Of a stretch of 64,000 nt of DNA, positions 11,201 through 61,169 are shown piece by piece. The DNA lies in NCBI RefSeq assembly GCF_037042905.1, contig NC_087261.1:13640001-13704000 (forward strand). The letters are read 5' to 3'. The notes under the pieces were generated by a model, which did not search any database, was not told the DNA's origin, and saw nothing but the letters and a program-made list of their open reading frames with translations. Numbering within the stretch: position 1 is the stretch's first letter; every line of letters begins with the position of its first letter. This DNA comes from Lytechinus pictus. Taxonomy: Eukaryota. The position numbers were made by a program, and so were the translations under genes.

Positions 11201-14200
11201 TCCTTATGTTCATCNNNNNNNNNNNNNNNNNNNNNNNNNNNNNNNNNNNNNNNNNNNNNNNNNNNNNNNNNNNNNNNNNNNNNNNNNNNNNNNNNNNNNN
11301 NNNNNNNNNNNNNNNNNNNNNNNNNNNNNNNNNNNNNNNNNNNNNNNNNNNNNNNNNNNNNNNNNNNNNNNNNNNNNNNNNNNNNNNNNNNNNNNNNNNN
11401 NNNNNNNNNNNNNNNNNNNNNNNNNNNNNNNNNNNNNNNNNNNNNNNNNNNNNNNNNNNNNNNNNNNNNNNNNNNNNNNNNNNNNNNNNNNNNNNNNNNN
11501 NNNNNNNNNNNNNNNNNNNNNNNNNNNNNNNNNNNNNNNNNNNNNNNNNNNNNNNNNNNNNNNNNNNNNNNNNNNNNNNNNNNNNNNNNNNNNNNNNNNN
11601 NNNNNNNNNNNNNNNNNNNNNNNNNNNNNNNNNNNNNNNNNNNNNNNNNNNNNNNNNNCATCTCATTGTCCATTTCATTATGTATTTTTTTATCTGTATA
11701 TGAATGCGTAAAGCTCCATGCAGCATTATACACAGTACATGTACATATTTATAGCTTTGTTATCAGTAACTTAATTTTACCGACATGTGGAGTACTTGTG
11801 AACTAATAAAATGCATGATAAATCAGTCCATTAGAATGAAATATTTACCACTCTGCTCTCCATTTATTCTTTTGAAATGAAATCCAATTTATATTTATCG
11901 TCATGCATCAATGTACGGCAACTACATGTATACATGTACATGTACACTGTTTGTAATTTGAATCGTACAGATCTTTCAGCTTATTCAACTTGCACATTTT
12001 ATATTTATTTTCATGAATGTCTACGAAGTACATGTAGATCTGAGTATACTTATCTTCTTTCCTCTTGTCCCTTTTAAATATTTATACGTATATAGTGTGG
12101 TTAATATTTGTGCAAAATGATGCATACACAAGTCTACTCGCATGATTCTAGAGATCTTCCTTATAGCCATGTTCCAGTCACAAAGTTTTGTTTAAGATAT
12201 CTTTGAATATTCAGACTGTAATACTCTGTATAATTACGTTACATAATTTATCTATGCGAAGCTAATTTTCATGTACCTTAGCCCTTGCGTTTTATTTTCC
12301 ACTATATGTGCACATTCCTCTTTCTGCTATGGCATGCTTACAATGTAAAAGGAGAACGGGGATAGGACTGATAGGTCTGAAAGGAGAGGCTCTCGCAGAC
12401 AGTCCCTTGCACCCGAACAGGGTGACGGTGATCTTCAGAAAACCCCTCGGAAGGGACCATCACGAAACGAAGAGGGGGAAAGAACGAAACGATCACGTAG
12501 ACCTCGTAAAGGACCGCCTCCCGAGGACGATGTTGATGAGAATGATGAGGGAGAGATATCCCCAGATAAGACCGGTCTGGAGGAAGAAGGAGCGCAAACA
12601 AAGAGGTCCCGCAGACCTCGTAAAGAACGCCCTCCTGGCGATGATGCTGATGATGGGGAAATTTCCCCAGCTAAAACAGACAGGACAAGACGATCACGCA
12701 GGCCTCGGAAAGAGCCGACACCCAATGACGATGAAGAACCGCAGCGAGACGAAGAAACCCCGCGGGATGAGGAAAGAATAGATGGAGTGGAAACATCGCG
12801 GAAACCTCGTAAAAGGCGCCCTCGTCCAAAACAAGGAGAAGATCCTTCAAGTGAGAAGCCTTCGGATCTTCGAAGGAAGTCTGTCCAGGAAAGGGCACGG
12901 ATCTTCCCACCAAAGGAAATCCCTCAGGAACATGCTGAACTTGATCCACTTGATAAGTTACGGAACCCCACCACTATACATGTACCTGTCAAGTCCAATC
13001 ACCCTAGGGTCATACCCGATGAGAATGCTAGACTCAGTCCTATGGACAAGCTAAGAACACACTATCCAGATGAACCACAAAAGCCAGTAAGATCTAGCTA
13101 GTCCTCCTGACTCCTAACCTGTATTCTAATACTAACAGCTTCCTTTCTTGGAAGTTCACACATGGAATAGCAACAAGGATCTACACACGCACACACAATT
13201 AAATTCTTACTAGAGAGTATTAACAGTGTTTTATTAATACACATACCAGTTGACGTGTTATGCAAGATTATATTGCAATACATAATATTAAACTTGCTTC
13301 CCCAGTAGTTCCCATGTCCTGCACATGTGCATGAACTGTTCAGGCATAAAACAGTCTACATGTAATAGGATTTTTTGAATATTACCCAAGTTTGAAACAG
13401 CGTCATCTTAGTGTAGATACTAACCATCGCACTTGCTGTGTGATCAAAGTAAAACGTTTCTTGTCTCATCAATACTTAACAAGCAGGGACGATGCTGCAA
13501 TATCTTGATAATGTAGGGCAAGACGATATACATTTTCTTGTAAAGGGGATATTATTTCCCAATTGAAACAGAGAAATATAGGGTTACATGTACATGTAGC
13601 TACATGACCCAGAAATCACTTTTTAATACTCTTCTTTCTTCCTTTTCTTCTAATTATATTTCACCGCTTGGTTATCATAGAGGGGTGTAGTCTCCCTCCC
13701 CACCCTATTGTGCAGCCCCAGTCGACACAGATCGGCTTCATACCTGACCCTCCCTATATAGAGTCATTATTCCCTCAATACACTGTATCTTAACCAGTTT
13801 GATTTTACTAATCATATTGCATCAACTAATGAACTTATTTGATTATCTTATTACTGAAACTAGGAAATGTTAGATAAATGATAGCAATGAATTAATTATC
13901 ATAGTGAATTGAACAATAAGAATTCTGCAGATCTATGTAAAAATGGTATCTAGAAAGAGAGAAAACAAAAACAGAACTTTGTAATGGCCTACAGTTGTAC
14001 ATCTCTGTCATATTGATTTTTTTGGGGGAAAATGCAACTTACATGTGTAGCCCTACAAATTAGGCTCTGATCGACCACTTCAGTAGTTTTCATATTCAAA
14101 TTATCAATATGCTGTGTCAATGCCCATTGAAGGATAATAGCAAGTGGATTATTTCCTTTGCAATTAGTTCTAGTGTTGTTTTTTTCACAATATTTGTTGT

Positions 14201-17200
14201 CATTGCCATATTAAATATGCTGTTTGGATGGCCATTCAATGTTAAATTTTAAGTGGAGCCATTTACAATAGTGTAGTTCCATTGGTACTTTTTGATACAT
14301 TATTTTTTTATCACTACCTACTTCATTATATTCCTCTTTCTGTCCCAGGACTCCTTTCTTGATTCTGGGCTATTCCCAGAAACTAAGGGCGGCTTTGAAG
14401 CCGCTTATAAAAAGCAACGCGTAAGTAGCGCCCTCTACATGTATGTCCCTCTTATTTGAAGGACAAACAATGTTTTAGAAGTGATCACCTGAGTGTTTTG
14501 AAAGTGATTTTGATTACACTGCACCCATGGAAAGTGTACTTGATATCAAGTTTGTACAATTTTGGTTAACCTGTTGACTACTTAATTCTGGTATTCCCAT
14601 TGACTTTGCACAGGGACCACCCAATTCCCATAGCCAATGTGTTAAGTTTCTTTTTTACTATTTTTTTTTACCAGAGACGGCATTGTTTTGGGGTTTTCCT
14701 TTGAGGCCAAGGATTACATTTGTCAACATCAAAATTATTTTCTGCTTGGTCTAATCTTAACCTTGCTTTATGTTTCATAACATGCTGTGAAGGTGCATAG
14801 TTGACTTCCGTGTGGTTAAAATGACTGATGTTTTCTAGAGTGTGTGCTGTACATGTATGTCGGTTTGCATAAAGCGGATGTAGACAAGCATACATTAAAT
14901 ACTTGGCCTTGTGGAACCTCCCTGTTGTTTTACTTACTGTTATTAGCACCAAATACCTGTCTTCATCCAAACTAAAATATACACTCTAGAAAACATCACA
15001 GTTTCTGGGAGCCATGATGGTGTTATTATTATTTTTTTTGGGGGGGTGGGGGGGGGAAGGTCACAGATGCAGTGTGATTTAATAATGATAATAATAATAC
15101 TCAATATTTATAACACGCTTTTCCCACATGGCCCAAAGTGCTCACAATTTCAGTTTTACTAATTTATACAAACAAAAAAATCAGAATGACATATCAACAC
15201 GTTTATTTAACACATTTATTGTAATCTAAAATGATATTGTTCTTTAAGCTCCAGAAGGTTACACATTATAAAAATTTTCATATATGTAGAACTAGTCTTG
15301 TAATTCCAAAACATTGTTATCTTTATTCTAGAATAGTCATGGTTATAACCATGATCAAAATCTTATCTTCTCTGTGATAGATATAGTATTACTGTATTTC
15401 ACAAATAAATCTGTATGGGGGGATTTTCTCCTTTTATTATAAACCTTTTGTTTGCATGAAGTACATGGTTATGGTTATGCTGTAAGTTTTTCATGGGTAC
15501 TTGTTAGTGTTTGGAGTTGTTTTATTCACTCTCAAAGCTTCCTTTATTTAATCTGATTTAGTTCATGTGGTACACCATCATTGTGTGTTTTAGTCACCCC
15601 TTGCTTATTACACAAACTGTACATGTAGTTGCTTGGAAAAATATTTTAATTGTTTTGGTTGTCTGATGGTTTGCTGCACTGCACTATTTTCTTGTTGATT
15701 GCACACAATTTAGTGAGTGGATTTGTTTTCCTATTAAGCACACTATCTTTTTAAACCCCTTTGTGTAACACTTCAAGTTTATTATTGAGTTCCCATTTTC
15801 TTTGTCTTTCATTTGACACTTTTCTAGTTCCTCAAGAATGTTGTTATTAGTAGTTTCTTTTGGAGTTTTCCTAAAGCACATTTCTGACACCCCTTTGTGT
15901 TTTATACACTTCAAGTTTTTTTATGAGTTCCCATTTTCCCACCTTTTATTTGTCCCTGTTCCACCAGTGTTGTTTTGAAGAGTTTCTTTTGGAGTTTGCA
16001 TTAAGCACTAATATATTCTGTTGATGGAATATAATCTTTGTATAACACTTTCTCTAATGAGTTCTGTCTCTCTTCATAGATTTGTCACTATTTCAGTTAC
16101 ACCAGTGTTGTTTTGAATCCTTTCTTTTGGAGTTTGCCTGATGCACAATTGTGTATTCATCATTGTAGTATAATCTTTTGATGACTAAACAAGACATTGC
16201 TCCTCATCCCATGCATTCTTCACTGAAGTACCTGGTCGACTGGCTCCGGGAATTAGACCCCGATCTTGTCGTCTATGCTGCCGCCCTTGCCGAGAATGGG
16301 TACAAGACGTGGAACACGATTCGTCGACTGAAGCGAGGCACGCTTCTCGAGCTCTGCCCGGACATTAAGCACGGTCACATCGAGGCAATCCTCCATGAGG
16401 TTAACCGTGGGCAAACTCCCCGTTCTAAGGTACTATCATAAAAGATAAACCTGTGTTTAAAGACCACATACATGTAAGCTCCCCATCCTAATTATGTTAA
16501 CCTGTCTATTATGACCCTTCATGAGGTAAATACTGATCAGACAACACTTTTCTGCAGTTCTATAATAGTTAAACCTACATGTATATGAGAGTTACATTTG
16601 ACAGGCTACCCATTCCAAGGCCATACAGTACTGACCATGTGCATGTAAATGTATATGTGGTCACATTGAATCTATCTGCTCTTTTGGGTCAGTAGATGTG
16701 ACAAAAATGAGTGGCAGATGAATTCAGGAGGTACATGTAGAAGATCATCTGTTCAGTCACCCCTCCTGCAACCCCTTGATGTGATACCCAGTCCCCTCTT
16801 TCTCCATGCAAGATGTACACTATAGAACGAGAGATTATCCGAACGAATCAAGACATGCATGTACATTGTACACGTTACGATGTGAATGTTTTAAAGCAAT
16901 TAGAAATGATGAGCAAATGCTTTTACTTTCCGTCAATTTCATGCAACCGTCAGAAGCCTCCGACAAGGCCTCAGGTGAGGTCTCCGGATAGTTTATCAGA
17001 GCAGGAATTAGACATCGCAGACATTGAATCAGTAAGCGTTCTTCATCTTTCATAATATTGCTAGAGATTAGACCCTCTACCTTGTGTCTCATCTTAACTA
17101 CATGTATTTATTTTTGTGCATGTATGTGTATATTCACGCTCAACAAGGCAAATTGCTCTTTGTTCTTTTATGTTATGTTATCACCTTTAATGCTATTTTC

Positions 17201-20200
17201 TATAACCATGTTACATGTATATGTCATCATTTTTTACTTGACTTATATGTACATGTATGTGTTTATGAAGAATGAAATAAAATCAATTCAGTTCATAAAA
17301 TCGATTCATTTACTGCCAGGGCTCACATGGCCCCAAGCTACTGTATGTACGTCGTACATGTATGCTTGTTAAAAGTAAATTAAATGCAATTTTTAAACAA
17401 CAAAAGCAATAACCTGTATAGGCAAGAACTACTATTGATCAAAAGTGTGGTTAAAAAAAGAGTGTGTTTCTCTTTTTACACTTCAGTGCTGCTTCAAATG
17501 TAATCTTGATATTCCATATTATTATCATTGTTGGGTTTAGACGTAGATGTAGATGGCACCGATGGTTGCAAAGCTATTAAAAAAATATGCCTACTTGAAT
17601 TGGAGTTGCATGGAAATATGTTGTTCTTTTTGTGTATAGCATAAATGCAAGTACATGACTGTCTATCTACATTTCTTTCCAAACAAATAATTGTACTTGA
17701 TTCCCATAGTCTAAAACCAGGCCAGCCCCTATTAGAAGGAGAGAGAAACAGAGAAGAGTAAGATTGTGTGTGATGACACGATTTGTAATTCATTAACACT
17801 CCCACCGGTATTTTGCACAGATTGAAGAGTCTCCCCCTTTTATTCATATCTTCACAAAGTGTTACTATGTGTTTGAACTGTCACTTGTTCCATTACCACT
17901 ATTGACTAACCCTAAAAGCGCCCCCCCCCCCACGACATTTTTCATGATAAATCAGCAGCGTGGATGTTTGCAGTGAGACGTTTCATAGCCTCTGTCTTTC
18001 AAGCCTCCTCAAACTTTTGTTGTCGCGATCAACAGCCAAGATTTTTTTTAAGCCACCCCCCCCCCCCCAGTCATTCCAGCCTCCTAATTTACATGTATTT
18101 CCCTAGTCTATCGACGGTTAAAGGTATTTGCTAACATTGATTTGACTTTTTAAAAATCTGAGCTGCGAGGTCCCACTTTTCACCTGCACCTGTGATATGT
18201 TACAAAAATGAAGCCCAGAAAAAATCGCGTCCGAAAATCATTATAAAGTGCTTCAAAAAAGTGAAATATAAAGTGACCGGAAATACCATCTTAATTTCAT
18301 CCATACACTTATGTGTTCTATTATTATCGGCACGATAGAAATTACACAAAACCATCAATTATAACGTATATCGAAAGAATTTCTTTCGATTTTTTTTGTT
18401 GTTTTAGAGTTTTTAGGTTGACAGAAAGGCATTCATGTACATATTTCATCTCTCCTTTGATATTTTTTAAATTACATGTCTACAACCTTAGCATATGCCT
18501 TAAATCTACAGTATGGTACTCTTGTCTTTTGATTGCCTCTTTGTCCACTTGTGCATGTAATACCCCTTGGTCCAATACCACATTACTCATGCCACCTTTT
18601 TTGTATTGAGTGCCTATTGAACTACACCCACTTCCAGTTTGCACCATTCTTTCAATTGATGCTAATTGGTCTAGTTCCAACTTAATAGTTCATTACCACT
18701 TATTCAAAGTCACTTTAGCAATCGGTCTATACCCGATTGGTCCAATACCACTTTGTTTATACCACCCTCACTCTTTCTATTGAATGTCACTTGGTCTAAA
18801 CCCACTTGGTCCACTGCCACTGTATCTTGGCCACTTTGTCTATTGGTCCCACTTGGTCCAAATCATTTTATCATCATCACTCAATATGTTGAATGCCATT
18901 GTGTAACAAGTTTTAAAACCACTTTCTGGACATGTATGTGTATCACAGACTTTTATTGATTATAGCATGTACATTATTTCATTTTACTCGGTCCATTCCA
19001 ACTGTTAAGATGTCATTTCGTCCATTGAGTGCACTTCACTCAATTGGCACTTGGTCCAATTCCACATTATCTGTACCCGTGGATGACTCCTGATATTATC
19101 CCTCATATATTCCAATGGTTTGATCTACAAGATTCCACCTGAAACAAAAGTTTTTTATTTTTTTCCCCCCGCATTTGTTAGATAATAAATGCACTTGTAC
19201 TACAATCTTTATAGAGAAGCACAAATAGTACAATATAGCTCTTTTGTTTGATACCAAATTTGTTAAGAGAGGATGAATATATTTTTTAATTGATAGATTT
19301 TAAAACGATTCTGGAAAATGGACAACTAATATGTAGAATTGCCAACTTGGTGTATGCAGTCTCATTACTGGAACTGTATCTTCCTGGTTAATTATCTATG
19401 ATGATGTAGTATTTTCCCTCGATTCATATTTGATGGAATTATTTTGTGTTCACAGCTCGAAGATATCAGTCCTAGGAATGGGAGATACTCAGTAAGTGAA
19501 GATTGTCTTGAAGTAAATTCTTCCAAAAGTCATACAAAAATCGTACGTGGAAGGTGATGATAATGTAACGATGATCCCTAATGTCGACAGTGATTTGGGA
19601 ATAAAATCAATGAAGAAAGGGTGGGGAAGTGACCGGGGCTTGTATCCTTGAATACTTTCTTGAATAAGCATGCAAGTACATGTACATGTACATGTATCTT
19701 TAGGGGCCCGTTGCAGAAAGAGTTGCGATCAAACGCAACTCAAAAAATCTTGCGCAACTTGATTTTCAGCCAATGAAGCACCCGTCTTCGGGACTTGCGT
19801 TGATATTTTGACTTGCGTTTAAACACAACTCTTTCTGCAACAGGTCCCTGAACTGATACTTATTGAGATGGAAAATGTAACAGGATTGCATTTACTGTCA
19901 GCAAATTGTTTCAATTATTTTTGCCACCCAAGTTACCAAAAGTTTGTGTAGTCTGTTTATGAATCCTCTGCTGTACAGGCTAAACTTTATATAGTAGGAT
20001 ATTTTAGGATGATAGGATCATTGAAATATGTTTGATTTAGAAGAAAAATTTGATTTGGAAGATATAGACAATGCCTGCCTAGCATACATTTCTAATCTAA
20101 AAAATGGCGTCCAGTTAGAATATAGTAATAGACAGAATTTCTTAATCAAGTTATCATTAATGTCCCTAATCTACCCATTGGATCTGATGTGGAATTACCT

Positions 20201-37393: not shown

Positions 37394-38829
37394 TAACGAG
37401 ATTGAAGATGATATGCTTCTAGAGGGCTTCAGCGATGTAAAATCTCCTTATGTTCTTGTACGTACATAGGACTGTGCTACATACAGGTGCATACTCTCAA
37501 TCTGGTAAACTGATAAACCTGTTACCTACTGAAAGCAGGTGGCAGCTTTTTTAAAGCCTAATACGGCTTAGTCTAGTCACAACAAACCAACACCCTGAAA
37601 ACTGTCTTTTGCACAAAGTTCGGAACCTGTACCCAAAAGCAGGAATTCAAGAGATGAATGACAATTGTGTAGTCTTTGAATTTGGCTTTCTGATAGCCAA
37701 TTTAAAATTCATTAAAAAAATTGTAGTAATTTTTTTTTTTTTACTGGAAATGTCCTTCCTTGATTCATATGGAATATGTTGGCTAAATATTCAATGTTAA
37801 ATATTACCCAAAAATTATTGTACAGTATATAAGAAAATAAAGAATCACTGTTTATTTTCATACTGTGACTACATGTATTTCATACTAAATGTAAATCCAT
37901 GTATGTGTAACTTGAGAGATCGATAGCTTGAGAACAATGCATATTTGAGAATTTGAAAATTATGAGCATGTTATTCTTTGTCACTGTTTAAGGATGAAAT
38001 TCTAACCTTTAATCCCTTTTCCAGTAGACGGCACATTAAATTTTTCCAGGTCAACTGTATCAGCTTGATGTGTGCTTGTGAATACAATTTTCATGGAAAT
38101 GCAGCTTCTTTCATACATGCTTTGGATTAATTTTTGTCAGTCATCATGATCCATTACACTATAGAGTTCATATATCATGTCGGACAGTTGCTCGCTTGTG
38201 ATACGTCACAATATCATACCTTCATTACTCGGTATCCCTGAGATATTCGCTAATCTGTTTCTTTTATTATTACTCCGATTAAAACCAACTTAATGCCAGG
38301 GTGAATTTCCGATTTATGGTCGTTTGACTTTGATTTCACATATTGGTGCATGTTTGTTTTGCTCTTTTTGGTTTCAATTTTCACATCTCCTTTACTTTTA
38401 CTTTTTTTTTCTTTTTTTTTACTCTAGAGAATCTCAAATACTTGCCCTTTCATCTCTTTTGAAGAGATTCCAGGATGAATGATATTATTATTACTTTTCT
38501 AATATGGTGCCACAAAGCTCGCCGACAAATTTGTGTAAATCTCAAACGGGATATGGGGCACAAGAAAAAAATTGCAGAGGAAAGCCATTACATGAATTTT
38601 TAATCAGCATATCAACAATCTTCCCTAAAAAGAAAATCGACTCAAAATATTTTTTTCCAGAGTTGCTCATCATACTGTAATCATGATAATGTTGTGAGTT
38701 TGTTCACCATTGGTCACTTTAGGAGACTTGTAGCATATTATTACTAAAAGATGATAAAAACACACTTTTTTAAAGTGTGATTATAGATATAAGCATAAAT
38801 AATCCAATATGTCTCTTTGTTTGTGAGCA

Positions 38830-39030
38830 CTATTACTGAGTTCAGTAGAGCTGGGGTTTTGGATTCTGGAAACCCGGTTTTGATTCCCACTTGGTGAGCT
38901 AGTACATCTACCCTTTGCTGAGGCCAGTATTTATCCTTACTACAAGGTCCCTCAGAGAGGACCTTTAAGCTGTTGATCCTCAAGTCGCTTGCTTACAAAC
39001 ATTCATGCTGTCTTTAGCAATCAGGTAAAA
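38830..39030 (+). mobile_element. tRNA-derived SINE, family 2, diverged; lies in the putative CSPP1 3' UTR
   Basis: Collinear similarity to 33422-33620. Confidence 0.7.
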
Positions 39031-39102
39031 AATTACCACCAATATGGGAAGTGTTGCTGAGCTTTGCGGCACCATGTCAGAACAAAGTTTTTAATCATGG
39101 TC

Positions 39103-39137
<35 letters not shown>

Positions 39138-39975
39138 AAGTAGTAGTAGCAGCAACTGTAGGAGCTGCAATAGTAGCATGAATAGTATATTTATCTGATG
39201 GTAACTTGCTCCTGATATTATGTGTAAATAGAAGTAAACAAGTCTGTTTTCATATTGTATGTATCATGTCATATAGATGTGCTGGTATAGATGAATATTA
39301 TGTTCATATATTGTATAAAATGTATTATCATAGGCTATTTATCTTAAAACATGTATATACATGTAAATATGAATATAGGAGTCACAGTTCTGTTATACAA
39401 GCTTGTTTAGTGTGTGTACGTGGAAACATTTAATGTACATTATTTAGACAATGTAAACATACATTACGTGTACATGTGTACATCATTGTGATCAGTTTGA
39501 TGTGTGTGTATGGGATAGCAGATATTAGGTGATTTCAGGTTTGGTGTATTTATTCATGTTGGTGTTAGTAGGTGTTGGTGTTGAAAATTTAACTCAGACT
39601 GCCTAATCCAGTCCTAACACTGAATATGGGTGTACAAAATGATACCATGCACATCATTAACACCTCAATACCTCGCTAAGTCCTTCCTAGGTCCATGCTA
39701 ACACCAATATCATTTTAAGTCTAGTGCTGTGAATTGATTTAAACCTCAGTCTAATGCTTACATCTGTCAATACTGAACTTGAAATCTCCTATTGTGCTGT
39801 CAGAAACCTTTTATATTTGTTTGCTTAAGCATTCCAATCACCTTGAATTTATTGCCTAATTATGTCTTCATCCTTTAATTTTCCATTTCCATTCTATTTA
39901 CATGTACATGTATGTGTGTATTGATATGTATTTATTTAGATATGCAAATTCAGTGACTTTATTTAATTTTCAGTG

Positions 39976-39981
39976 AATAAA
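39976..39981 (+). terminator. Candidate distal polyadenylation signal of CSPP1
   Basis: AATAAA followed by a T/GT-rich tract (ttttattttctggtttgttc); a proximal AATAAA also occurs near 37835. Confidence 0.45.
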
Positions 39982-40109
39982 ATGCCGAGATACATTTTAT
40001 TTTCTGGTTTGTTCTTCCCTTTTTTCCAATGTTTGATAAGTGTGAGTTCTGCCTCGAGCAGTACACCAATATTTAAGATTGATTTGTTAATTTTCCATTA
40101 ATGTGTGAG

Positions 40110-40745
40110 AAAGAGTGTGTGTGTAAGTGTGTGGTGATGAGTGTGTATGCATGTCAGGATGCATTGAATGTGCGGTTGTGTGTGTGGATGTGGGGTAAGG
40201 ATTTGTGTGTATTCATGTTAGGATATGCGGTTGTGTGGGGGTAAGGATACATGTATGTGTGAATGTGTGTTGGGATGCATTGTGTGTGTGTGTGTGTGGA
40301 GGTAAGGGTGGGGGTGTGTGTGTGCAGGTTGGGATGCATTGTGTGTGTGTTGGATAAGGATGTGTGTGATGGTGGGTGTGGGAGTGTGTGGAGGTAAGGG
40401 TGGGGATGTGTGTGTGCAGGTTGGGATGCATTGTGCGTGTGTTGGATAAGGATGTGTGTGATGGTGGGTGTGGAGTGTGTGGAGGTAAGGGCGAGGAGGT
40501 GTGTGTGCATGTTGGGATGATTGGAATGTGTGAGGGTGTGTGTGTGGGGGGGGGGTAAGGATGTCCGTCTATGGATGTGTGTGTGTGGATGAAGGAGTTG
40601 AGTGTGCGTGTGCATGTAGGGGGAGTTGAAAGTGTGAGTACATGTGTGTGGGCTTGATTTTGGTGTATGCATGGGTTTTGGGGTGTGGGAGGGTATTTGT
40701 GTGCATGTATTCATGTGTGGGAACGTGCGTGTGCATGTGTGTTTC
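40110..40745. repeat. TG-rich repeat with about 90-bp higher-order units
   Basis: Recurring gttgggatgcattgtg...ggataaggatgtgtgtgatggtggg. Confidence 0.9.
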
Positions 40746-41441
40746 CTGATTGTTCCTGGAAACATAAGTGAAAAGTTGTACCCTGTAATATATATACATG
40801 TATATGTTTTTTCATTATATTAATTAATAAGATGCCAAAGCTTTATGTTAAAATGGTTGATTATTTTATCTGTCATGTTTCCCACAGACAACTTGGCCAA
40901 TGTGAGCATTTAACTTGACCTTTCTCTTCATTATGTCTTTGGTTATATGATATAAAAAATGAATAGATGGATGGATAGGTAGATGTTGAAGACTTTCGAG
41001 GGGTTGGGTGTGATTTTATTCATGGAGCTGGTTGTCATGGCGGATGATTTTTCGGGTGACAATTGTCCTTTGGGGTCGTCTTCGGGGGAAGGGGGGGGGG
41101 GTCAAAACAGTCCATCCAAAATAATAACTTTCTAATCGTATTTGCCGATATAAACACATCTCCCTTTGTGGAGGAGAATCCAGCTTTCGCAAATAACGAT
41201 CGCTCGCTAAAGCCGATTTTTTTTTCCGGCTTTTGGAGGGATAGCCCCAAGTATATTTTGAACTGCATATTTAAGTTTATCCTCACGAAAACAAGATCAA
41301 GTATCTCTAAGGACTGAATATAATAAATGCGAGCGCAATTAAAGCGCAGGATTAAACTTTTGGACATTACATGTATTTAGACTAGCGAATTTGGTGCGTA
41401 TATATTCTAAAAGTATTAATGCGCGAGCTGTAATTATTAAT

Positions 41442-42100
41442 ACAGTGCGTCCCACAAAAAACGAAACCGAGATTTATCGATGATTTATCATAACTTAATC
41501 ACAAATACAATAGACAAATGACATATCATTGTAAAGCTTATAATTTCTATTACTTAGATTATTTCTCATTCACGCATGAGTGAGCAAAAACAATTTGAAG
41601 AGGGGATACCAAAAAGTCATTTGGCGGGCTGTACCTGGGTTTTAGAAAGAAAACCACATTTTTAAAAACTTTAATATCTGCTCTTTAATTTGATACCTCA
41701 ATTACAGAAAATGGTCAAGAAATAACATTTGAAATAAGGCTTGAATTTCAATAATTTCATAAAATGAAGAGGTTCTACAGGCTAGCGTTCAAACTCACTT
41801 TACACTCCGTTTTGTTGACGATCAGCCATGCATTAAGTCTTTTGTTAACCATGCTATAGCTTCTGTGGGAAACCGGTTAAAACACGTTTCTATACTTTAC
41901 CCGAGCTATTATGCATTCGAGCATGACGGCGTAATACTAACTTTCCTTTATCGTGGATATCGCAAAATAAATTATCACGAACCAAGACAGCATTCACAGT
42001 TCCCTTCCTTTCCTTTAGCACAAGGAATTGAAAACAAAGTGCAACGAAAGGTTAATATATATATTCCTCTTTACCCGAAAAATTAAAAGGCCGCAAAGAA
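41442..42100. mobile_element. Tc1/mariner-like non-autonomous element; related remnant at about 44340-44870
   Basis: TA|CAGTGCGTCCCA terminus; shared blocks tcacgcatgagt and aaatgaagagg between the two loci. Right end not identified. Confidence 0.5.
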
Positions 42101-42915
42101 AGTTCTTGCCTTTTTTGCTTTATCAAAAAAATGAATAAATAAATACATTTATCAAGAATCATTTGAAACTTTAATATTGCATTCTACACATCGAATACGA
42201 GCACGAAGAGTTACTAGAATTGGCATTAATATCAGAATAACTTTAGTAGAGGTGGTTTCATACGTCGCCATCGCCGTGAAGGAGAGAGATGAGACCGTGT
42301 ACGAGGCCCTTGATCGAGCAAATGGAGCGATTGACACATGATGGATATTCGAATGATGTGTCGCAAGAGAAAAAAAAATGTTAAAACGTATAGCTTATCT
42401 CTGAGAATCCGGAAGAGTACTTTCATTTTCTATCGGGTAAAATGAGAGATATAGATTTTTCAGGCTATATTATGTAAATAAATTGAACGAAATCGGAGAA
42501 AAATTGAGGGAGTACAAAATTTAACGGATTATCGGGGGCGCCGCCGAAATTTACAACTCGATCCTTTCCTCCTTTTCCGCGACCTGACATCTTGATATAT
42601 GAGAGCTAGTTGTGTATGATACTGAAGACTGGATGTTACGCTGAGCGAATCCAACTATTTACAGGGATTAACCCTTGTACTACTCCGAAAGGAAAGATGA
42701 GGTTGAGGAAAACTTGGTACACTTGGAAGATGAACTCGCCCACTTGGGATACGTGTTAGTGGGAGTAGAGTCAGAGTGAAGTCGGAGAAGGAAGAGGAGG
42801 AGGAAGAAGAGTTCGTGGAGGAGGGGTCATGGGCGGAGTCAGGAATGGAGTGGCTTGGAGTGTGGATTGGAGTCGGATGAGGAGTCATTTTAAATGGGAT
42901 CGAAGGAGCAATTAA

Positions 42916-43078
42916 TACCTCGGTTACATTTTGATCTACGGCGGTCGTACGGCGAGTCGATCACAGCAGTTTTAACATTATTTGTAATAGCCGCATATAG
43001 GTGGTTTGAATAGAAATGAATAAAACGGCTGTTTTCGACTCGCCGTACGGCCGCCGTAGAGCAAATGTGACTAAGGTA
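42916..43078. mobile_element. Palindromic MITE with TAA TSD
   Basis: TAA|tacctcggttacattt ... aaatgtgactaaggta|TAA; about 65-bp arms. Confidence 0.75.
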
Positions 43079-43924
43079 TAAGCAACCGGTTTTTATATTG
43101 CAATAAAATATTTTCTCTATATTAAGCATCTTTCATAATGAGTGAGCTCTAAAATAGCGCTCAATTTGTCGGAAAATGCTGATTGAAATAATAGTTATTA
43201 AATTGTATGTGTCTTTTTCACGATTCTTTTACATTATGTTGGCATATTACAAGGGCTTCCCGGCTATTTTTGCCCGCAACTTATTTGAAATTTGTAACAG
43301 AAATTGATAAAAAAAAACAATGCTTCTGTAGAGACAAAACTAGTAAATACTGATATTTCGCTTCTGCAGAGGCTAGTTAACATCGACACACCACATGGAA
43401 TATGAAACCCCTCCGTAGAATGCTTTGTCAGTTGATTGGAATGCTTATTGTATTCATTTAGCTTTTCAAATGTAAGGTGCTTGAGTTCGTATCCTCCCTA
43501 ACACATAGTCCGTGATTTTTCACTGCTGGAAATCGTGGCATATTAACTCAAAGGAAATCACTGACATGAAAAACGCTCACCTGACATGATGAATGCAAAG
43601 TCCCATACGCCCTAAGTCCTATTATGCATGGTATCACAATGAGAAAGCTGTAAGCAAGGGGATAAACTCAATGAAATCATTTGTGGTCCACGATGAAACC
43701 ATTCGTGGTAACCAACCATGGGTGGAGCATTATGAATACGGACTCTGTGGGACGACGGTAAGTTCGTATTTACCAACATGTTACAGGATTCAAACCGCCA
43801 TTCGCGGTTCGGAAAGATCTAGTTTAAAATTTTACTGGAGAAGGAGAGCAGACATCAACCCGTCCAAGCAAGGGAAGAGAAGGACGATATTTTGATTTGA
43901 GATAGTGCCAGCTAGCTAGCCAAC

Positions 43925-46900
43925 ATGAGGCGCAATCGATTGTTTTGTGGAACATCCATTTTGGTCATTGGAGTGATAGCTGTAAACTTACTATTCGTGT
44001 TACAACTGTTCAAAATACAAGGCAAGTATAAGGATGCATTTTCATGAAGTTCAAAGTTTCTTTACAAGTATCATTACACTTAACAAGTATTTATATTGGG
44101 AGGACGATTATTATTAAATGGTTTAATATGAAGGAAATTGAGAGTCCAAGTCGGTCCTTCTTCTAGAGCAGTACAACCACTGCAGTGTTGTCGTACTGTT
44201 GTCGTACAACATCAACAAGTACTGGGTTCTCTTTTAAAAGAAAAATCATTTCCGTTATTGTACAAAATCCATCTGCAAACAAGAGGAGCTGTAAGTTTGA
44301 TCTAGAATTACCTATAGTAGGGGTCGGTTTTTTTTTTCCAAACCGTGTACAGAAACGTTAAAAAAAAATTAAAAAAAATATGATTCCCCTTTCACGCATG
44401 AGTGGACTAAACCAATTTGAGGAAAGGATGCAAAAAGTCACAGTTGGTTAGCACAGCATCTGAGTTTTTATAAAAAATCACTAGTAAAAAAAAATTCAAT
44501 ATTTGATACCACAGCCACTGAAATAGTCAAAAAATAAAGTTATATTTATTTAAAATATTGCTTAATTTCCAATGATTTCACTAAATGAAGAGGTTTTACT
44601 GGCTAGCTGTCAACTCCCCGTTTTGTAAGCGATAGCTAGTACGTTGCAAAATCTGTGAAAATACGTTTGTTTGAAGAAATTATGGAAATAAAAAATATGT
44701 ATTATCCATTACTTCCTTACCATTTTCCTATGAATGAGGTATCAAAATAATGAGAGATCGGATATTGAGGTTTTAATGATGTGATTTTCCGTTTGAAATT
44801 CAGATACCGCCGGCCAAGTGATGTTTTGATATCCTTCAAATTTGTTTTTGCTCACTCATACGATAATGATCACTGCAAAATTATTTATGTTGATGTGTGT
44901 TAAGTCTTTACATCATAACAATTGTTACTTAATTGCTAGATTCTAATGTGAATCAATTTTTCTGTCAGTTTTCTGCACCATGCTACGCCCCGCCTCCTTA
45001 AAATCCACTAGATCATTCTTGTTTTCTGTTGTGATGTCACATTGGACAAAATAAACGTAACAATACACAATACCATGCACTGGCACAACTAGGTGCCATT
45101 GCAAACAATTGCATCACAAGCTTTCATACAATAACAATAAATAACAATCCCACGTTTTCACTATTAAAAGGTGCCATAGTGACTGCCATGTCAAAAATGT
45201 TTTTTTACGGTTGCGAAATGGTAGGCCTATTGTGTGAAGGCATCTAGTTGTGGCAGGGTTCATGGTATATTGGTATTGTACTTGTTATACTTATTTTCCC
45301 CAATGTGACATCACAAGATCAAAAGAATTGACCGAGTGGATTAAAATGAGGCGGGGCTTAGCATGGTGCATAAAATTGATAGAAAAAATGATTACACTTT
45401 ATTCTATGAAGCACATATTATAATCTAGCAAGTTAACGATTTTGTGACTTAAAGATGTACAGTACGCATCAGCTTTTTGCCTTTCCACGCCAGGGACACT
45501 TTATGTTATACCACATGAGAAAGGAGACTCAGTCTAAGCCTTATAAAGACATGCCATTTTTGAACTGTTTTTCAATAAAAAAAATAATTATGACCGATAA
45601 TTCTCAGGTTTGTTTTTCTGCGAGCGCACTGTATAGATTCAGCATAGGCGGCGGAAGCGGGGGGGGGGGGGGGGACGGGGGGACCTGTCCCCCCCCTAAA
45701 TTTGAGGTGGGGGGACGGTCCCCCCCCCCTAAATTTTTTGTTGATAACCTTTTTTTTTTTTTTTTTTTTGCTTGTCAAAAAATTTTGCGATCCCCTCCTA
45801 AAATTTAGGTTTAGGTTTTCCCTGTGTCCATCAAAAAATTTCAGGTGCCCCCCCCTAAATCTTTTGGCTTCCGCCGCCAATGAGATTCAGAATAGAATAG
45901 TTACACATACTCCTGGTCTTGATTACTGCTTGTATACACATCTGCAACACAATGCCACCCAGACTCTTTGTCTCGTAGGAGGAAGCACTAGAATCCAAAC
46001 ATTCACAGAATTGAAGAAAAAAATCGGTGCCAATTAGGTAATCAAATTCTAGGATGTCTACAAAACGAAGTCCTAAGACCCAAGACCCCATATATACTAC
46101 AAAAAACTACAAAACTAAGACACATGCAACCAACTACAAAACTAAGACCCTGTGTAATACTGTTGTTGTTGTTGTTATCTTGGGTTTTAAGGCGCGTATC
46201 ATTCAGATATGAATATTTACTCACAGGATGCAGCCTAGTCTGTACTACAGACCCAGTTATTGAGAAACACTTCAAACATACCACCTATATCCTATGTATT
46301 TGATTCAAAATTACAAAACTAAGACCCTGTGTAATGTTCATTTGTATACAGCTTAGTCTGCGTCCCAGACCTAGATATTTTGAAAAAGTTCAAACCTACC
46401 ATTATTCTTATCTCTATTTATTCTTTGGTACTTGCCGCATCCGTACCATATACTGAATTTTATTTTTATATATCTTGGGTATGTGCGTTTTAACAAGCCT
46501 TTTTATGGCTTTTTTTGTGCATGCCCAATTCCATTCATTATTTTATTCATAGATATTTTTATAATTATGTGCCAACCATAATTTCATCATTACCACTATT
46601 TGTTTCAGTTTTGTTCTGTTGATACCTTTGCTTTGTTTTATGCTATTTATATTTTCTTTGTGTATATATTATTTTGTTCTTATTTTGTTCTTTTTAATGA
46701 ATTTGTTAATAAATACTGTATTGAAAAAAAAATGAAATTGAATCCTTCATCCTAGTCTGAACTTTAGAAAAAACTAGATAAGACCACATAAAAAAGGACA
46801 TTGTTACTCAGAGATATATTCTTGGTCTGCTTTACATCCACGACAATAATAATATGGCTATAAAGCAAGTTTATTTTTATTATTCATTTAAATTTGTTTG

Positions 46901-49900
46901 TTACAAGGGAATCTATATCGGCCGAAAAGCAGAAATGCATAACACTTAACAAAATATTATATAAAAATACATTCAACATCCAATCAAAAAGCTCAATTCT
47001 CACAAATTCTCTACATCATAAGAAACAGCAAAACACCTAGATATTGTTGTTTATCATGGTGAGGGCGCATGTGTTGAATTATGACAAGCATCTCCATCAC
47101 GAATAACTCAAATTTAAAATACATGCGGCCGATTTTGAATAATCAGAAAATAGCAGGGAAGGAAGGAAAAATAAGACTAGGCTGCATGCCAATGTGTATT
47201 ACACAGGGTATTAGTTTTATAGTTTTGTATCAAGTACATAGGATATAGGTTGTAGATTTGATATGTTTCTCAATAACTGGGTCTGGAGTACAGACTAGGC
47301 TGCATCCTATGAGTATTACACGGGGTCTTAGTTTTGTAGTTCGTTGGGTCTTAGTTTTGTAGTTTTGTATTACGTACATAGGATATAGGTTGTAGATTTG
47401 AAGTGTTTCTCAGTAACTGAGTCTGGAGTACAGACTAGGCTGCATACAAATGAATATTACACATGGTCTTAGTTTTTTGTAGTTGGTTGGGTCTTAGTTT
47501 TGTAGTTTTTTTTTGTAGTATATATATGAGATCTTGGGTCTTATGTCTTAGGTCTTCGTTTTGTAGACACCCCAAATTCTATTGTAAAAAAAAGGGAGTA
47601 TGGTCAACGGAATTCGTATCAGAGTATAGTGTCACGCCTGTTACTTAGTTTTGAAGTCGCCCCACCAATGAAAATATATGGGGGGGGGGGCAAACATATC
47701 GTTTTGCCCCCCCCCCCAATAATTCCGCATATGCAAAAAATAAAATAAGATTGTAATGTTACACAGAAATCAGCAAGCGAGATTGAGATATACAACTCGT
47801 TCTTTATTTAAAATCGTGCTCAAAATGTCCGCTTTTCAGATCGAAATATAAAAATTTTCAGCTCGCGCTTTGCGCTCGCTAATTTCTGTAGCGAAAACCC
47901 ATAATTTTCATGATTAAATAGGTAAATAGAATGTCCCGTTTTCAGTTCTAAACCTCAAAAGAACTCCCGCTTCGATTTGCAATAATCATTTGTTGGATAT
48001 ATATCTTGTTCTTTATTAAAAACGTCCATAAAATTCAACTTTTTCAGATCGAAATATCAAAAATTTTAAGCTAGCGCTTCGCGCTCGCATCTATTGTTTT
48101 TTAGATACCCATCTTAATCATTGGTACCAAAAATGCTTAGAATATCAAGCTTTAAGTTCAGAATATAAAGAAATTTCAGCTCGCTCTCGGCACTCGCATT
48201 ATCTTGCATTTTGGATCCCATGCCTACATGGCTGGTTAAGAAGCATTTGTCTGTTTTACTCCCAGTACTTTCACGTATCCTGAATCTGTCAATGTCTACT
48301 GGTGTTTTCCCAGAGAGTCTTAGATCGTCCATTATAACACCGGTTTTCAAGAAGTCTACTCTGGACAAAGATAGTTTAGGTAGTTATAGACCTGTTTCTA
48401 ACATGCAATTTGTAGACAAAGTGATTGAAAAGGCTGTTTCCAAACAGGTATCTACTTTTGTTACACAAAATAATTTACTGGATCCAATGCAGTCTGCATA
48501 TCGTGAGGCACATAGCACTGAAACTGCATTGATTAGTCTACAGAATGATATGAATTGTGCAATTGACAATAAGCAAGCTGTTTTCTTATTAATGCTTGAC
48601 CTCTCATCTGCCTTTGATACGGTAGATCACAATATCCTTTTGCAAAGGTTGGCTAATGACTTTGGCCTAGGTAACAATGCTCTTTCCTGGTTCAAGTCGT
48701 ATCTTAGTAACAGGTCTAGTCGAGTACACATAAAAGGGTCACTTTCTAGTGAGAAACCATTGAAATATGGTATACCGCAAGGGTCAATTATCGGGCCTCA
48801 GTTGTTTACATAATACATCAGTAATATTGGGAACATCATCAGTCGGCACTCAATTCAGTATCATGTTTATGCCGATGACATTCAGATGTTCACCACTTTT
48901 GATCCTACCAAGCCTGGAGATGCAGCCTGCGCGTATTTTCGGATTTTAAAATGTTTATCTGACATTCAATCGTGGCTTGTTGATAATAAATTGAAATTAA
49001 ATTCTTGTAAAACAGAGTTCTTTGTTGCTGCATCTCCTGCACACCTTAATCGGTTCCTTGACCTTTCTTTTTTCTTTTAATGACATAGATATTCCATTAT
49101 CTTCAACCATTAAGGATTTAGGAGTTGTTTTTGATAGTGAAATGAAAATGACCGAACATGTAACATACCTGTGTCGCACTCTCAACTGGCAAATATATAA
49201 TCTCAATCGCATTAGAAGTTTCCTGGATAAGGACACGTGTCATAATGTTGTTAGGGCTCTTGTGCTCTCCAGGCTCGACTATGGTGGTTGCTTGCTTGGG
49301 GTATTAGTAAACAGGATCTTGGAAGACTTCAAGGCCTTCAAAACAAATGTGCACGATTAATCTGTCAAAAACCAAAATGGTGTCATGCTACCCCTCTTCT
49401 AAATGAACTACATTGGCTACCTGTTTCTGATAGAATACATTATCGAATACTTGTTCAAACCTATAAATCTCTGTCAACCATACTACCTTCTTACATTTCT
49501 TCGTTATTTCAGCAACAAAGATCTACATACTCTCTTCGTTCTGCAGCTGCTCCTTCCTATGTCATTCCAAAATCCAGAAAACAGGCCGGTTTCAACTCTT
49601 TTCAATCTCTTGCCCCCCCCCCCCGTCTTTGGAACAAACTCCCTCCATCTCTTCGAAACCTCTCTTCTCTTGACCTCTTCAAAAAACATCTCAAAACACA
49701 CTTATATAACCATAAACCTTAACTTGTCTTATATGCAATCAACAGCGCTTTGTATCCTCTGGAAAAAGCGCTATATAAATCCAATTATTATTATTATTAT
49801 TATTATCTGTGTATAGTGAGATATGTATCCTCCTCCTGAGTTACTACATACAGTCCTAAACAGGCACCTTTTTCCTGTTATCAGGTCAGTATACTAAAAA

Positions 49901-61137: not shown

Positions 61138-61169
<32 letters not shown>

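What the first reader, a model, noticed from the sequence alone, without database searches (positions are those of the whole stretch)
16169..16429. SAM-domain exon within CSPP1: an unexpected domain architecture
Seen: an in-frame exon encodes [58 protein letters not shown], a compact sequence with the SAM hallmark residues, and the exon boundaries fit the domain closely. It is CpG-dense compared with its flanking introns. Knowledge: SAM domains mediate polymerisation, protein binding or RNA binding; I do not know of one in vertebrate CSPP1. Inference: a shuffled or captured domain exon, possibly from another gene or a transposon, could give some CSPP1 isoforms a self-assembly module.
Basis: partly seen in the sequence, partly recalled or inferred. 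Interest (0 to 1): 0.8.

Follow-up and report, generated by a model that had tools for sequence, protein, structure and literature searches.

The report
Hidden SAM-domain exon in sea-urchin CSPP1
A real, transcribed 201-base exon in the sea-urchin version of the cilium and centrosome gene CSPP1 encodes a divergent SAM protein-interaction domain that acorn worms share, and that was not found in the one mammalian, one tunicate and five abalone CSPP1 proteins checked.

Summary
The exon is 16229-16429 (+), 201 nt, phase 0-0.

The window is the Lytechinus pictus CSPP1-like gene. All 18 RefSeq isoform models examined contain the exon, and an RNA contig splices it to the next exon.

The peptide has a SAM fold:
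- The AlphaFold2 model is a five-helix bundle.
- Nearly all top structural matches in two searches are SAM or SAM-like domains (Z up to 10.3).
- Pfam SAM_1 matches all six orthologues, but below threshold.
- A profile-profile comparison links it (E 2.4e-9) to a repeat protein, one repeat of which passes the SAM_2 cut-off.

The exon is old, and nothing found points to a transposon. An exon of the same size and phase lies at the same place in the hemichordates Ptychodera and Glandiceps. It belongs to a roughly 360-480-residue block that annotated Saccoglossus, Glandiceps, tunicate, lemur and abalone CSPP1 proteins lack. All 14 Glandiceps RefSeq models skip the intact exon, so it may be alternatively spliced there.

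It is among the best-conserved parts of the protein. Its CpG excess is real and unexplained.

The most likely role is self-association or partner binding; this is inferred, not shown.

The scan's earlier notes cover only this window, not other DNA.

The parts
16229..16429 (+). SAM-domain exon: 201 nt, 67 codons, phase 0-0. Corresponds to residues 1335-1401 of isoform X5 (P0001) and 1351-1417 of isoform X1 (P0011).
   Evidence: AG at 16227-8 and GT at 16430-1. Identical to the RefSeq isoform models. RNA contig covers 16229-16427 and joins on to 16952-17031. Five-helix AF2 model. SAM structural matches.
14349..14420 (+). Upstream 72-nt phase 0-0 exon (...[24 protein letters not shown]), joined to the SAM exon in the RefSeq models.
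   Evidence: tblastn of P0011 at 100% identity. Sequence with AG and GT ends. Its last residues complete the N-terminal context that allows a SAM_1 hit.
16954..17031 (+). Downstream 78-nt phase 0-0 exon ([12 protein letters not shown]...), with a NAGNAG alternative acceptor at 16957.
   Evidence: Joint 16429->16954 and joint 17031->17710 in the RNA contig. Isoforms read SKKPPT or SKPPT. Sequence.
12349..13086 (+). Large charged, repeat-rich exon of the same inserted block. Its end carries the AELDPLDK...RLSPMDKLR motifs shared with Ptychodera. Coordinates are the aligned coding span, not verified splice sites.
   Evidence: tblastn at 100% over residues 1081-1326 of P0011. Collinear with Ptychodera P0003. 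No Pfam family.
15768..16185 (.). Intronic direct repeats (families of 2-3 copies, start-to-start spacing 129-139 bp) that end just before the exon.
   Evidence: the repeat finder families D1-D3. TRF found nothing above its threshold.

Best explanation
Bases 16229-16429 are a genuine exon of the Lytechinus pictus orthologue of CSPP1. It is included in every isoform model examined. It encodes a complete, sequence-divergent SAM (sterile alpha motif) five-helix domain.

The domain is part of a block of roughly 360-480 residues. The block was inserted between the conserved central coiled-coil region and the C-terminal region that holds the CSPP1_C domain. By alignment to a lemur orthologue, the central region corresponds to the microtubule-organising and pausing helices of human CSPP1. 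Echinoids and enteropneust hemichordates share the exon with the same size (201 nt) and phase. It was therefore acquired, plausibly by exon shuffling, no later than the common ancestor of echinoderms and hemichordates, and it has stayed under strong purifying selection since.

Inferred mechanism: like most SAM domains, it acts as a protein-protein interaction module. The most likely mode is self-association, or pairing with another SAM protein. Either would raise the local valency of CSPP1 on microtubules of centrosomes and cilia.

Shown here: the exon, its splicing, the fold, its conservation and its distribution among species. Inferred: what it binds and any effect on microtubules.
For: Gene identity:
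- Pfam CSPP1_C scores 67 bits against a cut-off of 27.
- The protein is collinear with Ptychodera CSPP1.

Splicing:
- A spliced RNA contig covers 16229-16427, 16952-17031 and continues to 17710.
- The three variants seen in RNA reads are all synonymous.

Fold:
- AF2 models have pLDDT 77 and 79, each with five helices.
- The top 36 Foldseek PDB hits are all SAM domains, with rmsd 1.4-1.7 over 56-59 residues for several and about 30% identity to SARM1.
- VIA-align gives Z up to 10.3, and all 50 top entries are SAM domains.
- A Foldseek-independent scan of 48,161 chains gives SAM or SAM-like domains for about the top 42.

Sequence:
- SAM_1 matches 6 of 6 orthologues below threshold (best E 0.0025) and SAM_2 matches 3 of 6.
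- hhalign to the repeats of P0004 gives probability 96% and E 2.4e-9. The first P0004 repeat scores 21.2 bits on SAM_2, above the 20.5 cut-off.

Conservation:
- Identity to Diadema is 92% in the domain against 66% overall, the best of 176 windows of 60 residues. Identity to Ptychodera is 52% against 38%, ranking 10th of 176.
- Orthologous 201-nt phase 0-0 exons lie at L001:68387-68587 and L004:55577-55777.

Why oligomerisation is plausible: in human CSPP1, helix H5 appears to mediate di- or oligomerisation, and replacing it with a leucine zipper restores microtubule affinity (PMC9948759).
Against: - No member reaches the Pfam gathering score for SAM_1 or SAM_2 directly. The bare exon peptide gives no SAM hit at all.
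- Foldseek E-values are weak (0.01-0.5) because the domain is short.
- The VIA-align output warns that Z below about 13 in helical folds may reflect only a common arrangement.
- Nothing here tests self-association, partner binding or any effect on microtubules. Some SAM domains are monomeric, and some bind RNA or lipids.
- RNA coverage was thin: one contig plus a few reads, from about 6% of each raw run. Exon skipping in L. pictus is therefore not excluded.
Confidence: 0.65

Rival explanations
1. The domain is a SAM fold but works as an RNA-binding module of the Smaug/Vts1 type. It would tether specific mRNAs to centrosomes or cilia rather than mediate protein-protein assembly.
For: The Vts1p SAM domain is among the structural matches at Z 6.8. 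Conserved basic residues (K34, R41, R44, K55 of alignment A1) are invariant across six orthologues.
Against: Vts1p ranks about 42nd, well below the Eph, SARM1, SAMD5, BICC1 and ANKS3 SAM domains. No sequence similarity to Smaug-type SAM domains was detected.
Confidence: 0.07
2. The exon is an optional cassette. It is included in sea urchins but normally skipped elsewhere, so that only special (tissue- or stage-specific) CSPP1 isoforms carry the SAM module.
For: Glandiceps talaboti has an intact 201-nt orthologous exon with AG and GT ends. None of its 14 RefSeq isoforms (1151-1245 aa) contain it or the neighbouring block exons. Every exon mapped around it in L. pictus is phase 0-0, so skipping would keep the reading frame.
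Against: All 18 L. pictus isoform models examined include it, as does the single Ptychodera model. No skipping joint was seen, although read depth was very low. The Glandiceps gap could simply be incomplete annotation.
Confidence: 0.2
3. The segment is a recently captured or transposon-derived fragment, or an untranscribed pseudo-exon, that resembles a helical domain only by chance.
For: Its composition differs from the rest of the gene: CpG and GC3 are high and all Arg codons are CGN. Direct repeats lie immediately upstream.
Against: Orthologous exons of identical length and phase exist in two hemichordates. It is spliced into RNA. It is the best-conserved 60-residue window against Diadema. 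Only 7 hits were found among 1.84 billion representative proteins, none transposon-related by name or Pfam match. RNA depth is about 8, against hundreds to thousands on the nearby repeats at 18137-18333 and 19713-19900.
Confidence: 0.03

Closest known systems
SARM1 second SAM domain (PDB 6qwv, 6o0s, 9l2f)
   Same: Five-helix SAM fold. Z is 9.0-9.3 and rmsd 1.6-1.9 over about 62 residues, with the highest structure-based identity of any match (27-30%). A weak profile hit shares the DWL..LDP..Y motif (E 0.56).
   Different: SARM1 has tandem SAM domains that form an octameric ring next to ARM and TIR domains. Here a single SAM domain sits inside a long coiled-coil and disordered microtubule-associated protein. 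The sequence similarity is not significant on its own.
Eph-receptor, SAMD5 and SHIP2 SAM domains (PDB 1b0x, 5zrz, 5zrx)
   Same: These are the best structural matches, with Z 9.4-10.3 covering 63-70 of about 70 residues. They are heterotypic or homotypic head-to-tail SAM-SAM binders.
   Different: Identity is only 14-19%. Those domains are C-terminal in signalling proteins. No binding partner is known for the domain described here.
Vertebrate CSPP1 (human CSPP-L, PMC9948759)
   Same: The gene is an orthologue: it has the CSPP1_C domain and the N-terminal, central coiled-coil and C-terminal regions are collinear.
   Different: Human CSPP1 is described as helices H1-H8 separated by linkers, with no globular domain. 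The lemur orthologue has 79 unrelated residues where Ptychodera has about 430 residues including the SAM domain.
Multi-SAM repeat protein P0004 (unnamed ENA metagenome protein) and Antedon DED-Roc protein P0005
   Same: These are the nearest non-orthologous sequences. P0004 gives phmmer E 5.5e-10 and hhalign E 2.4e-9, sharing a DWL-R-ID...Y...NGY core. P0005 gives E 1.1e-6.
   Different: They carry the unit as 4-8 tandem copies in unrelated architectures. Identity is 24-34%. Neither is a demonstrable donor.

Membership tests
SAM domain superfamily (Pfam clan SAM; SAM_1 PF00536, SAM_2 PF07647) | Compact domain of about 65-70 residues made of five helices, with a long C-terminal helix | tested here: met
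   AF2 helices at 10-17, 19-30, 36-39, 44-50 and 56-70 of the 79-residue fragment. pLDDT is 79, and 85-89 across the core. The single-sequence model has the same topology.
SAM domain superfamily (Pfam clan SAM; SAM_1 PF00536, SAM_2 PF07647) | Superposes on solved SAM domains over the whole domain, ahead of other folds | tested here: met
   All top 50 VIA-align entries are SAM domains, with Z 8.5-10.3 and rmsd 1.3-2 for the short ones. In the Foldseek-independent scan of 48,161 chains, about the top 42 are SAM or SAM-like. Foldseek PDB and Swiss-Prot lists are dominated by SAM domains.
SAM domain superfamily (Pfam clan SAM; SAM_1 PF00536, SAM_2 PF07647) | Direct profile match at or above the Pfam gathering score | tested here: not met
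   SAM_1 scores 15.5 bits for L. pictus against a cut-off of 23. It hits 6 of 6 orthologues with best E 0.0025. SAM_2 scores at best 18.4 bits against 20.5. The exon peptide alone gives no hit. I therefore file it as a divergent member of the SAM fold superfamily, not as a Pfam SAM_1 or SAM_2 family member.
SAM domain superfamily (Pfam clan SAM; SAM_1 PF00536, SAM_2 PF07647) | Significant sequence homology to a domain that passes a SAM model (transitive) | tested here: met
   hhalign of A3 against A4 (P0004 repeats) gives probability 96.2% and E 2.4e-9 over 60 columns. P0004 repeat 1 scores 21.2 bits on SAM_2, at or above the 20.5 cut-off.
SAM domain superfamily (Pfam clan SAM; SAM_1 PF00536, SAM_2 PF07647) | Self-association or SAM-SAM binding through mid-loop and end-helix surfaces | not testable with these tools
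   No multimer prediction or biochemistry was available. The only observation is that charged surface positions are invariant.
[quoted passage not shown] | CSPP1_C domain (PF24578) plus collinear N-terminal, central coiled-coil and C-terminal regions | tested here: met
   CSPP1_C gives E 1e-18 and 67 bits. BLASTP shows collinearity with Ptychodera, Saccoglossus, Glandiceps, Styela, Microcebus and Haliotis CSPP1. The window holds residues of about 725-1832.
Transposon-derived or recently captured exon | Multiple dispersed copies, or similarity to transposon proteins | tested here: not met
   Seven hits in 1.84 billion representative proteins. Three are the CSPP1 orthologue groups (two full-length CSPP1 proteins and one unnamed ENA contig fragment). 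None has a transposon-related name or Pfam match. A whole-genome copy count was not possible.

The most novel reading that the evidence does not exclude
Echinoderms and hemichordates equipped the luminal microtubule stabiliser CSPP1 with a regulated, splice-selectable SAM polymerisation module. The module would turn CSPP1 into a self-assembling scaffold at ciliary tips or centrosomes. It would be included in all known sea-urchin isoforms, whose embryos are densely ciliated, and optional in acorn worms. This would be a natural experiment in how oligomeric state tunes the control of microtubule dynamics from the lumen.
Probability: 0.2. Interest if true: 0.55.

Novelty: new member of a known kind. 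Interest (0 to 1): 0.38.

Why it matters
CSPP1 is a Joubert-syndrome protein. It stabilises microtubules from the luminal side and is part of the ciliary tip module. In vertebrates it is described as helices and linkers only, and forced dimerisation alters its microtubule affinity (PMC9948759).

A conserved globular SAM domain in the sea-urchin and acorn-worm orthologues is not annotated in the precomputed Pfam domain lists returned with these proteins. It was also not found in the searched literature.

The domain offers a natural variant for testing how valency affects CSPP1 function, in an organism where cilia are easy to study. It is also a clean example of a single symmetric exon that equals one domain and has kept the same length for as long as the two phyla have been separate.

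The case carries a practical warning. Absence of the domain from annotated proteins was misleading, because Glandiceps has the exon in its genome but in none of its 14 gene models.

Tried and rejected
- hmmscan of the raw open frame, which includes intronic residues, gave no SAM hit. The hit appeared only in the spliced context.
- phmmer and profile searches against PDB sequences gave only a designed repeat protein and a weak SARM1 hit. These were treated as uninformative.
- Word-indexed searches with the SAM region and the CSPP1_C region of P0001 reached only sea urchins. A third search, with a conserved Ptychodera region, gave the wider set of orthologues.
- Genomic DNA could not be fetched for S. 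purpuratus, L. variegatus, Diadema (gene longer than 100 kb), Styela or the ENA contig. No dN/dS estimate or test of CpG conservation was therefore possible.
- TRF found no tandem array upstream of the exon at its threshold, although repeat finder shows direct repeats spaced about 130-140 bp.
- The idea that hemichordates other than Ptychodera lack the exon was rejected for Glandiceps after six-frame translation of its locus.
- The 16169 acceptor was rejected.
- Vertebrate CSPP1 loci were not searched in six frames. For vertebrates, absence rests on one lemur protein, on the published description of the human protein, and on no CSPP1 entry among the top Swiss-Prot fold hits.
Full report
**1. 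What is in the sequence**

Bases 16169-16438 form one open frame on the + strand that contains the quoted peptide.

An AG at 16227-16228 follows a pyrimidine-rich tract, and a GT follows base 16429. The exon is therefore 16229-16429: 201 nt, 67 codons, phase 0-0.

A search of 1.84 billion representative proteins gave seven hits at E 0.001 or better. [quoted passage not shown]

The 18 L. pictus isoform models retrieved all read ...KKQR|YLVDW...PRSK|K(K)PPT... across the two junctions. Mapping isoform X1 onto the window places residues of about 725-1832 on 20 exon-sized matches at about 92-100% identity. The window is therefore the 3' two-thirds of this gene. The neighbouring exons are 14349-14420 (72 nt) and 16954-17031 (78 nt, with a NAGNAG alternative acceptor at 16957). 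Both are phase 0-0.

**2. Transcription and splicing**

One call was available to lay reads on the window.
- A 316-nt contig from an RNA run of the same species covers 16229-16427. It joins 16429 to 16954 with GT..AG ends, then joins 17031 to 17710. It has 16 further letters upstream of 16229 that do not lie on the intron.
- Raw RNA-seq runs were sampled at only about 6% and gave a few reads on the exon in one run. Their three differences from the window (16348, 16372, 16396) are all third-position synonymous changes.
- No skipping joint was seen, but depth is too low to exclude one.
- A second contig (15995-16202) runs unspliced through 16169, so that acceptor has no support.

**3. Is it a SAM domain?**

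Sequence evidence taken alone is below threshold.
- The raw frame gives no SAM hit.
- With the correct upstream exon residues, the L. pictus fragment hits SAM_1 at E 0.022 (15.5 bits, cut-off 23) over profile positions 3-60 of 64.
- All six orthologous fragments hit SAM_1 (best E 0.0025), and three hit SAM_2.
- The Glandiceps exon hits SAM_2 at 18.4 bits against a cut-off of 20.5.

A transitive link is significant. The profile of the CSPP1 domain aligns to the profile of the repeats of P0004 with hhalign probability 96% and E 2.4e-9 over 60 columns. P0004 is an unnamed ENA protein. Its first repeat scores 21.2 bits on SAM_2, above the cut-off.

Structure evidence is clear.
- AlphaFold2 gives a five-helix bundle both without an alignment (pLDDT 77) and with six sequences (pLDDT 79).
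- The first 36 Foldseek hits in the PDB are all SAM domains: EphA7, SAMD5, SARM1, Scm, SLy1 and others. SARM1 aligns at rmsd 1.4 over 59 residues with 30% identity.
- Swiss-Prot models give SAMSN1, SAMD5, STE11 and Eph receptors.
- VIA-align gives Z up to 10.3, and all 50 listed entries are SAM domains.
- A scan of 48,161 representative chains that does not depend on Foldseek returns SAM or SAM-like domains for roughly the first 42 places.
- Language-model features also point to SAM clusters (49 of 100 hits).

I conclude that this is a divergent member of the SAM fold superfamily. It does not reach the Pfam SAM_1 or SAM_2 thresholds directly.

The exon fits the domain closely. The exon is residues 9-75 of the 79-residue model, and the helices span residues 10-70.

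**4. Age and distribution**

The domain occurs at the same place in CSPP1 of L. variegatus, Strongylocentrotus purpuratus and Diadema setosum. A fragment from an unidentified ENA contig carries it at 65% identity. The 1842-residue Ptychodera flava protein also has it and carries CSPP1_C. Urchin and Ptychodera proteins are collinear on both sides of the domain.

In the Ptychodera genome the domain is a single exon, L001:68387-68587. It is again exactly 201 nt, with AG and GT ends and phase 0-0.

Other CSPP1 orthologues were recovered from Saccoglossus, Glandiceps, Styela, Microcebus and Haliotis. None has a detectable domain. All of them lack the whole segment that corresponds to Ptychodera residues of about 1180-1540. 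The SAM exon is therefore one part of a larger lineage-restricted block, which also contains the large charged exon at 12349-13086.

Annotation turned out to be a poor guide. Six-frame translation of the Glandiceps locus found an intact orthologous exon, L004:55577-55777. It is 201 nt with AG and GT ends, scores E 2.4e-34 against the profile, and is 76% identical to the Ptychodera exon. Neighbouring block exons are also present. None of the 14 RefSeq isoforms, which are 1151-1245 residues long, include them.

The same six-frame test found nothing in two other loci:
- The Haliotis cracherodii locus, which has no gaps.
- The Saccoglossus locus, where two 50-N scaffold gaps lie inside the relevant interval 37860-46778. 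I did not try to fill those gaps.

The simplest reading is a gain no later than the common ancestor of echinoderms and hemichordates, with possible loss in Saccoglossus. An older origin with losses elsewhere is not excluded. Tunicate and vertebrate loci were not searched in six frames.

**5. Selection**

The 60-residue core is 92% identical between L. pictus and Diadema, against 66% for the whole protein. That ranks first of 176 windows. Against Ptychodera it is 52% versus 38%, ranking tenth of 176. Twenty-four positions are invariant across urchins, the ENA fragment and two hemichordates, and they include several charged residues. This rules out a neutral or decaying insertion.

**6. Composition**

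- The exon has 18 CpG, against 8.3 +/- 2.5 expected when the same peptide is re-coded with the gene's own codon usage (P about 2e-4).
- GC is 0.567, against an expected 0.471.
- All six arginines use CGN codons, against 39% CGN elsewhere in the gene.
- GC3 is 0.66, against 0.39 in the large exon.
- The Ptychodera exon is not CpG-rich, with a ratio of 0.56.

I have no tested explanation. Candidates are local hypomethylation, synonymous constraint such as splicing signals, or biased gene conversion. Given the age of the exon, the pattern cannot be a sign of recent capture.

**7. Origin**

No donor was identified. The nearest non-orthologous sequences are the ENA multi-SAM protein P0004 and P0005, a protein of the crinoid Antedon mediterranea that has Death-effector (DED) and Roc domains and four copies of a related unit. 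Both are 24-34% identical. Among solved structures, the second SAM domain of SARM1 is closest in sequence at 27-30%.

None of the 7 hits has a transposon-related name or Pfam match. RNA depth on the exon is about 8, against hundreds to thousands on the nearby repeats. A symmetric exon that equals one domain is the classic signature of exon shuffling, but that is an inference.

**8. How it probably works**

Human CSPP1 is described as helices H1-H8 separated by linkers. Helix H5 appears to mediate di- or oligomerisation, and swapping it for a leucine zipper restores microtubule affinity. The minimal active unit is the microtubule-binding region plus a dimeriser plus the pausing domain, H6 residues 706-796 (PMC9948759).

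By alignment through the lemur orthologue, the inserted block lies between lemur residues 798 and 877. That is just after the region matching H6 and before the C-terminal region. The numbering is approximate.

A SAM domain at that position most plausibly adds a second self-association or partner-binding site, which would raise the valency of CSPP1 on microtubules. This step is inferred and was not tested. Less likely alternatives are an RNA-binding SAM domain or a purely structural role.

**9. Comparison with what is known, and verdict**

No paper in the searched library links CSPP1 to a SAM domain. The precomputed Pfam domains for these proteins list only CSPP1_C.

The exon itself is already in RefSeq gene models. 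What is new is recognising the fold, its distribution among species, its one-exon architecture, and the unannotated Glandiceps copy.

This is a new, divergent member of a known domain kind in a new protein context. It is of moderate interest to cilia and microtubule biologists and to those studying domain evolution. It is not a new kind of system.

The earlier scan notes on this window describe the phase 0-0 exon array and the large repeat exon, and they fit the block described here. The scan had no record of this finding on other DNA.

Noticed in passing
L004:55577-55777 (Glandiceps talaboti CSPP1 locus); also L004:54520-54849 and 57265-57342: An intact orthologous SAM exon (201 nt, AG and GT ends) and neighbouring block exons are present in the genome, but absent from all 14 RefSeq isoforms (1151-1245 aa). 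Either the whole block is an alternatively spliced cassette or the annotation is incomplete.
   Followed up: partly
window 16229-16429: The exon's codon usage differs from the rest of the gene. It has 18 CpG against 8.3 +/- 2.5 expected (P about 2e-4), all six Arg codons are CGN, and GC3 is 0.66 against 0.39 in the large exon. The Ptychodera orthologous exon is not CpG-rich. This is unexplained.
   Followed up: partly
window 15768-16185: Families of direct repeats (2-3 copies, 73-91% identical, start-to-start spacing 129-139 bp) lie in the intron immediately upstream of the SAM exon. TRF did not report them.
   Followed up: partly
window 16954 / 16957: A NAGNAG tandem acceptor (cag|aag|) gives isoforms that differ by one lysine, SKKPPT versus SKPPT.
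   Followed up: yes
window 61130-62371 (+): A single 413-codon open frame with strong matches to MGAT4_cons (E 7e-70) and MGAT4A_C (E 5e-25). It looks like an intronless, or terminal-exon, MGAT4-like glycosyltransferase gene downstream of CSPP1.
   Followed up: partly
window 48211-49722 (+) and 57150-57755 (+): Two reverse-transcriptase (RVT_1) open frames, E 3e-22 and 2e-27. These are non-LTR retrotransposon fragments between CSPP1 and the MGAT4-like gene.
   Followed up: partly
window 18137-18530 and 19702-19900: RNA and contig depth here is hundreds to thousands of times that of the CSPP1 exons. There are many variants and loose ends, which suggests high-copy repeats in the introns rather than exons.
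   Followed up: no
P0005 (Antedon mediterranea XP_071952312.1): A crinoid protein with Death-effector and Roc GTPase domains carries four near-identical copies of a 70-residue unit distantly similar to the CSPP1 SAM domain. Pfam does not recognise the unit as SAM.
   Followed up: partly
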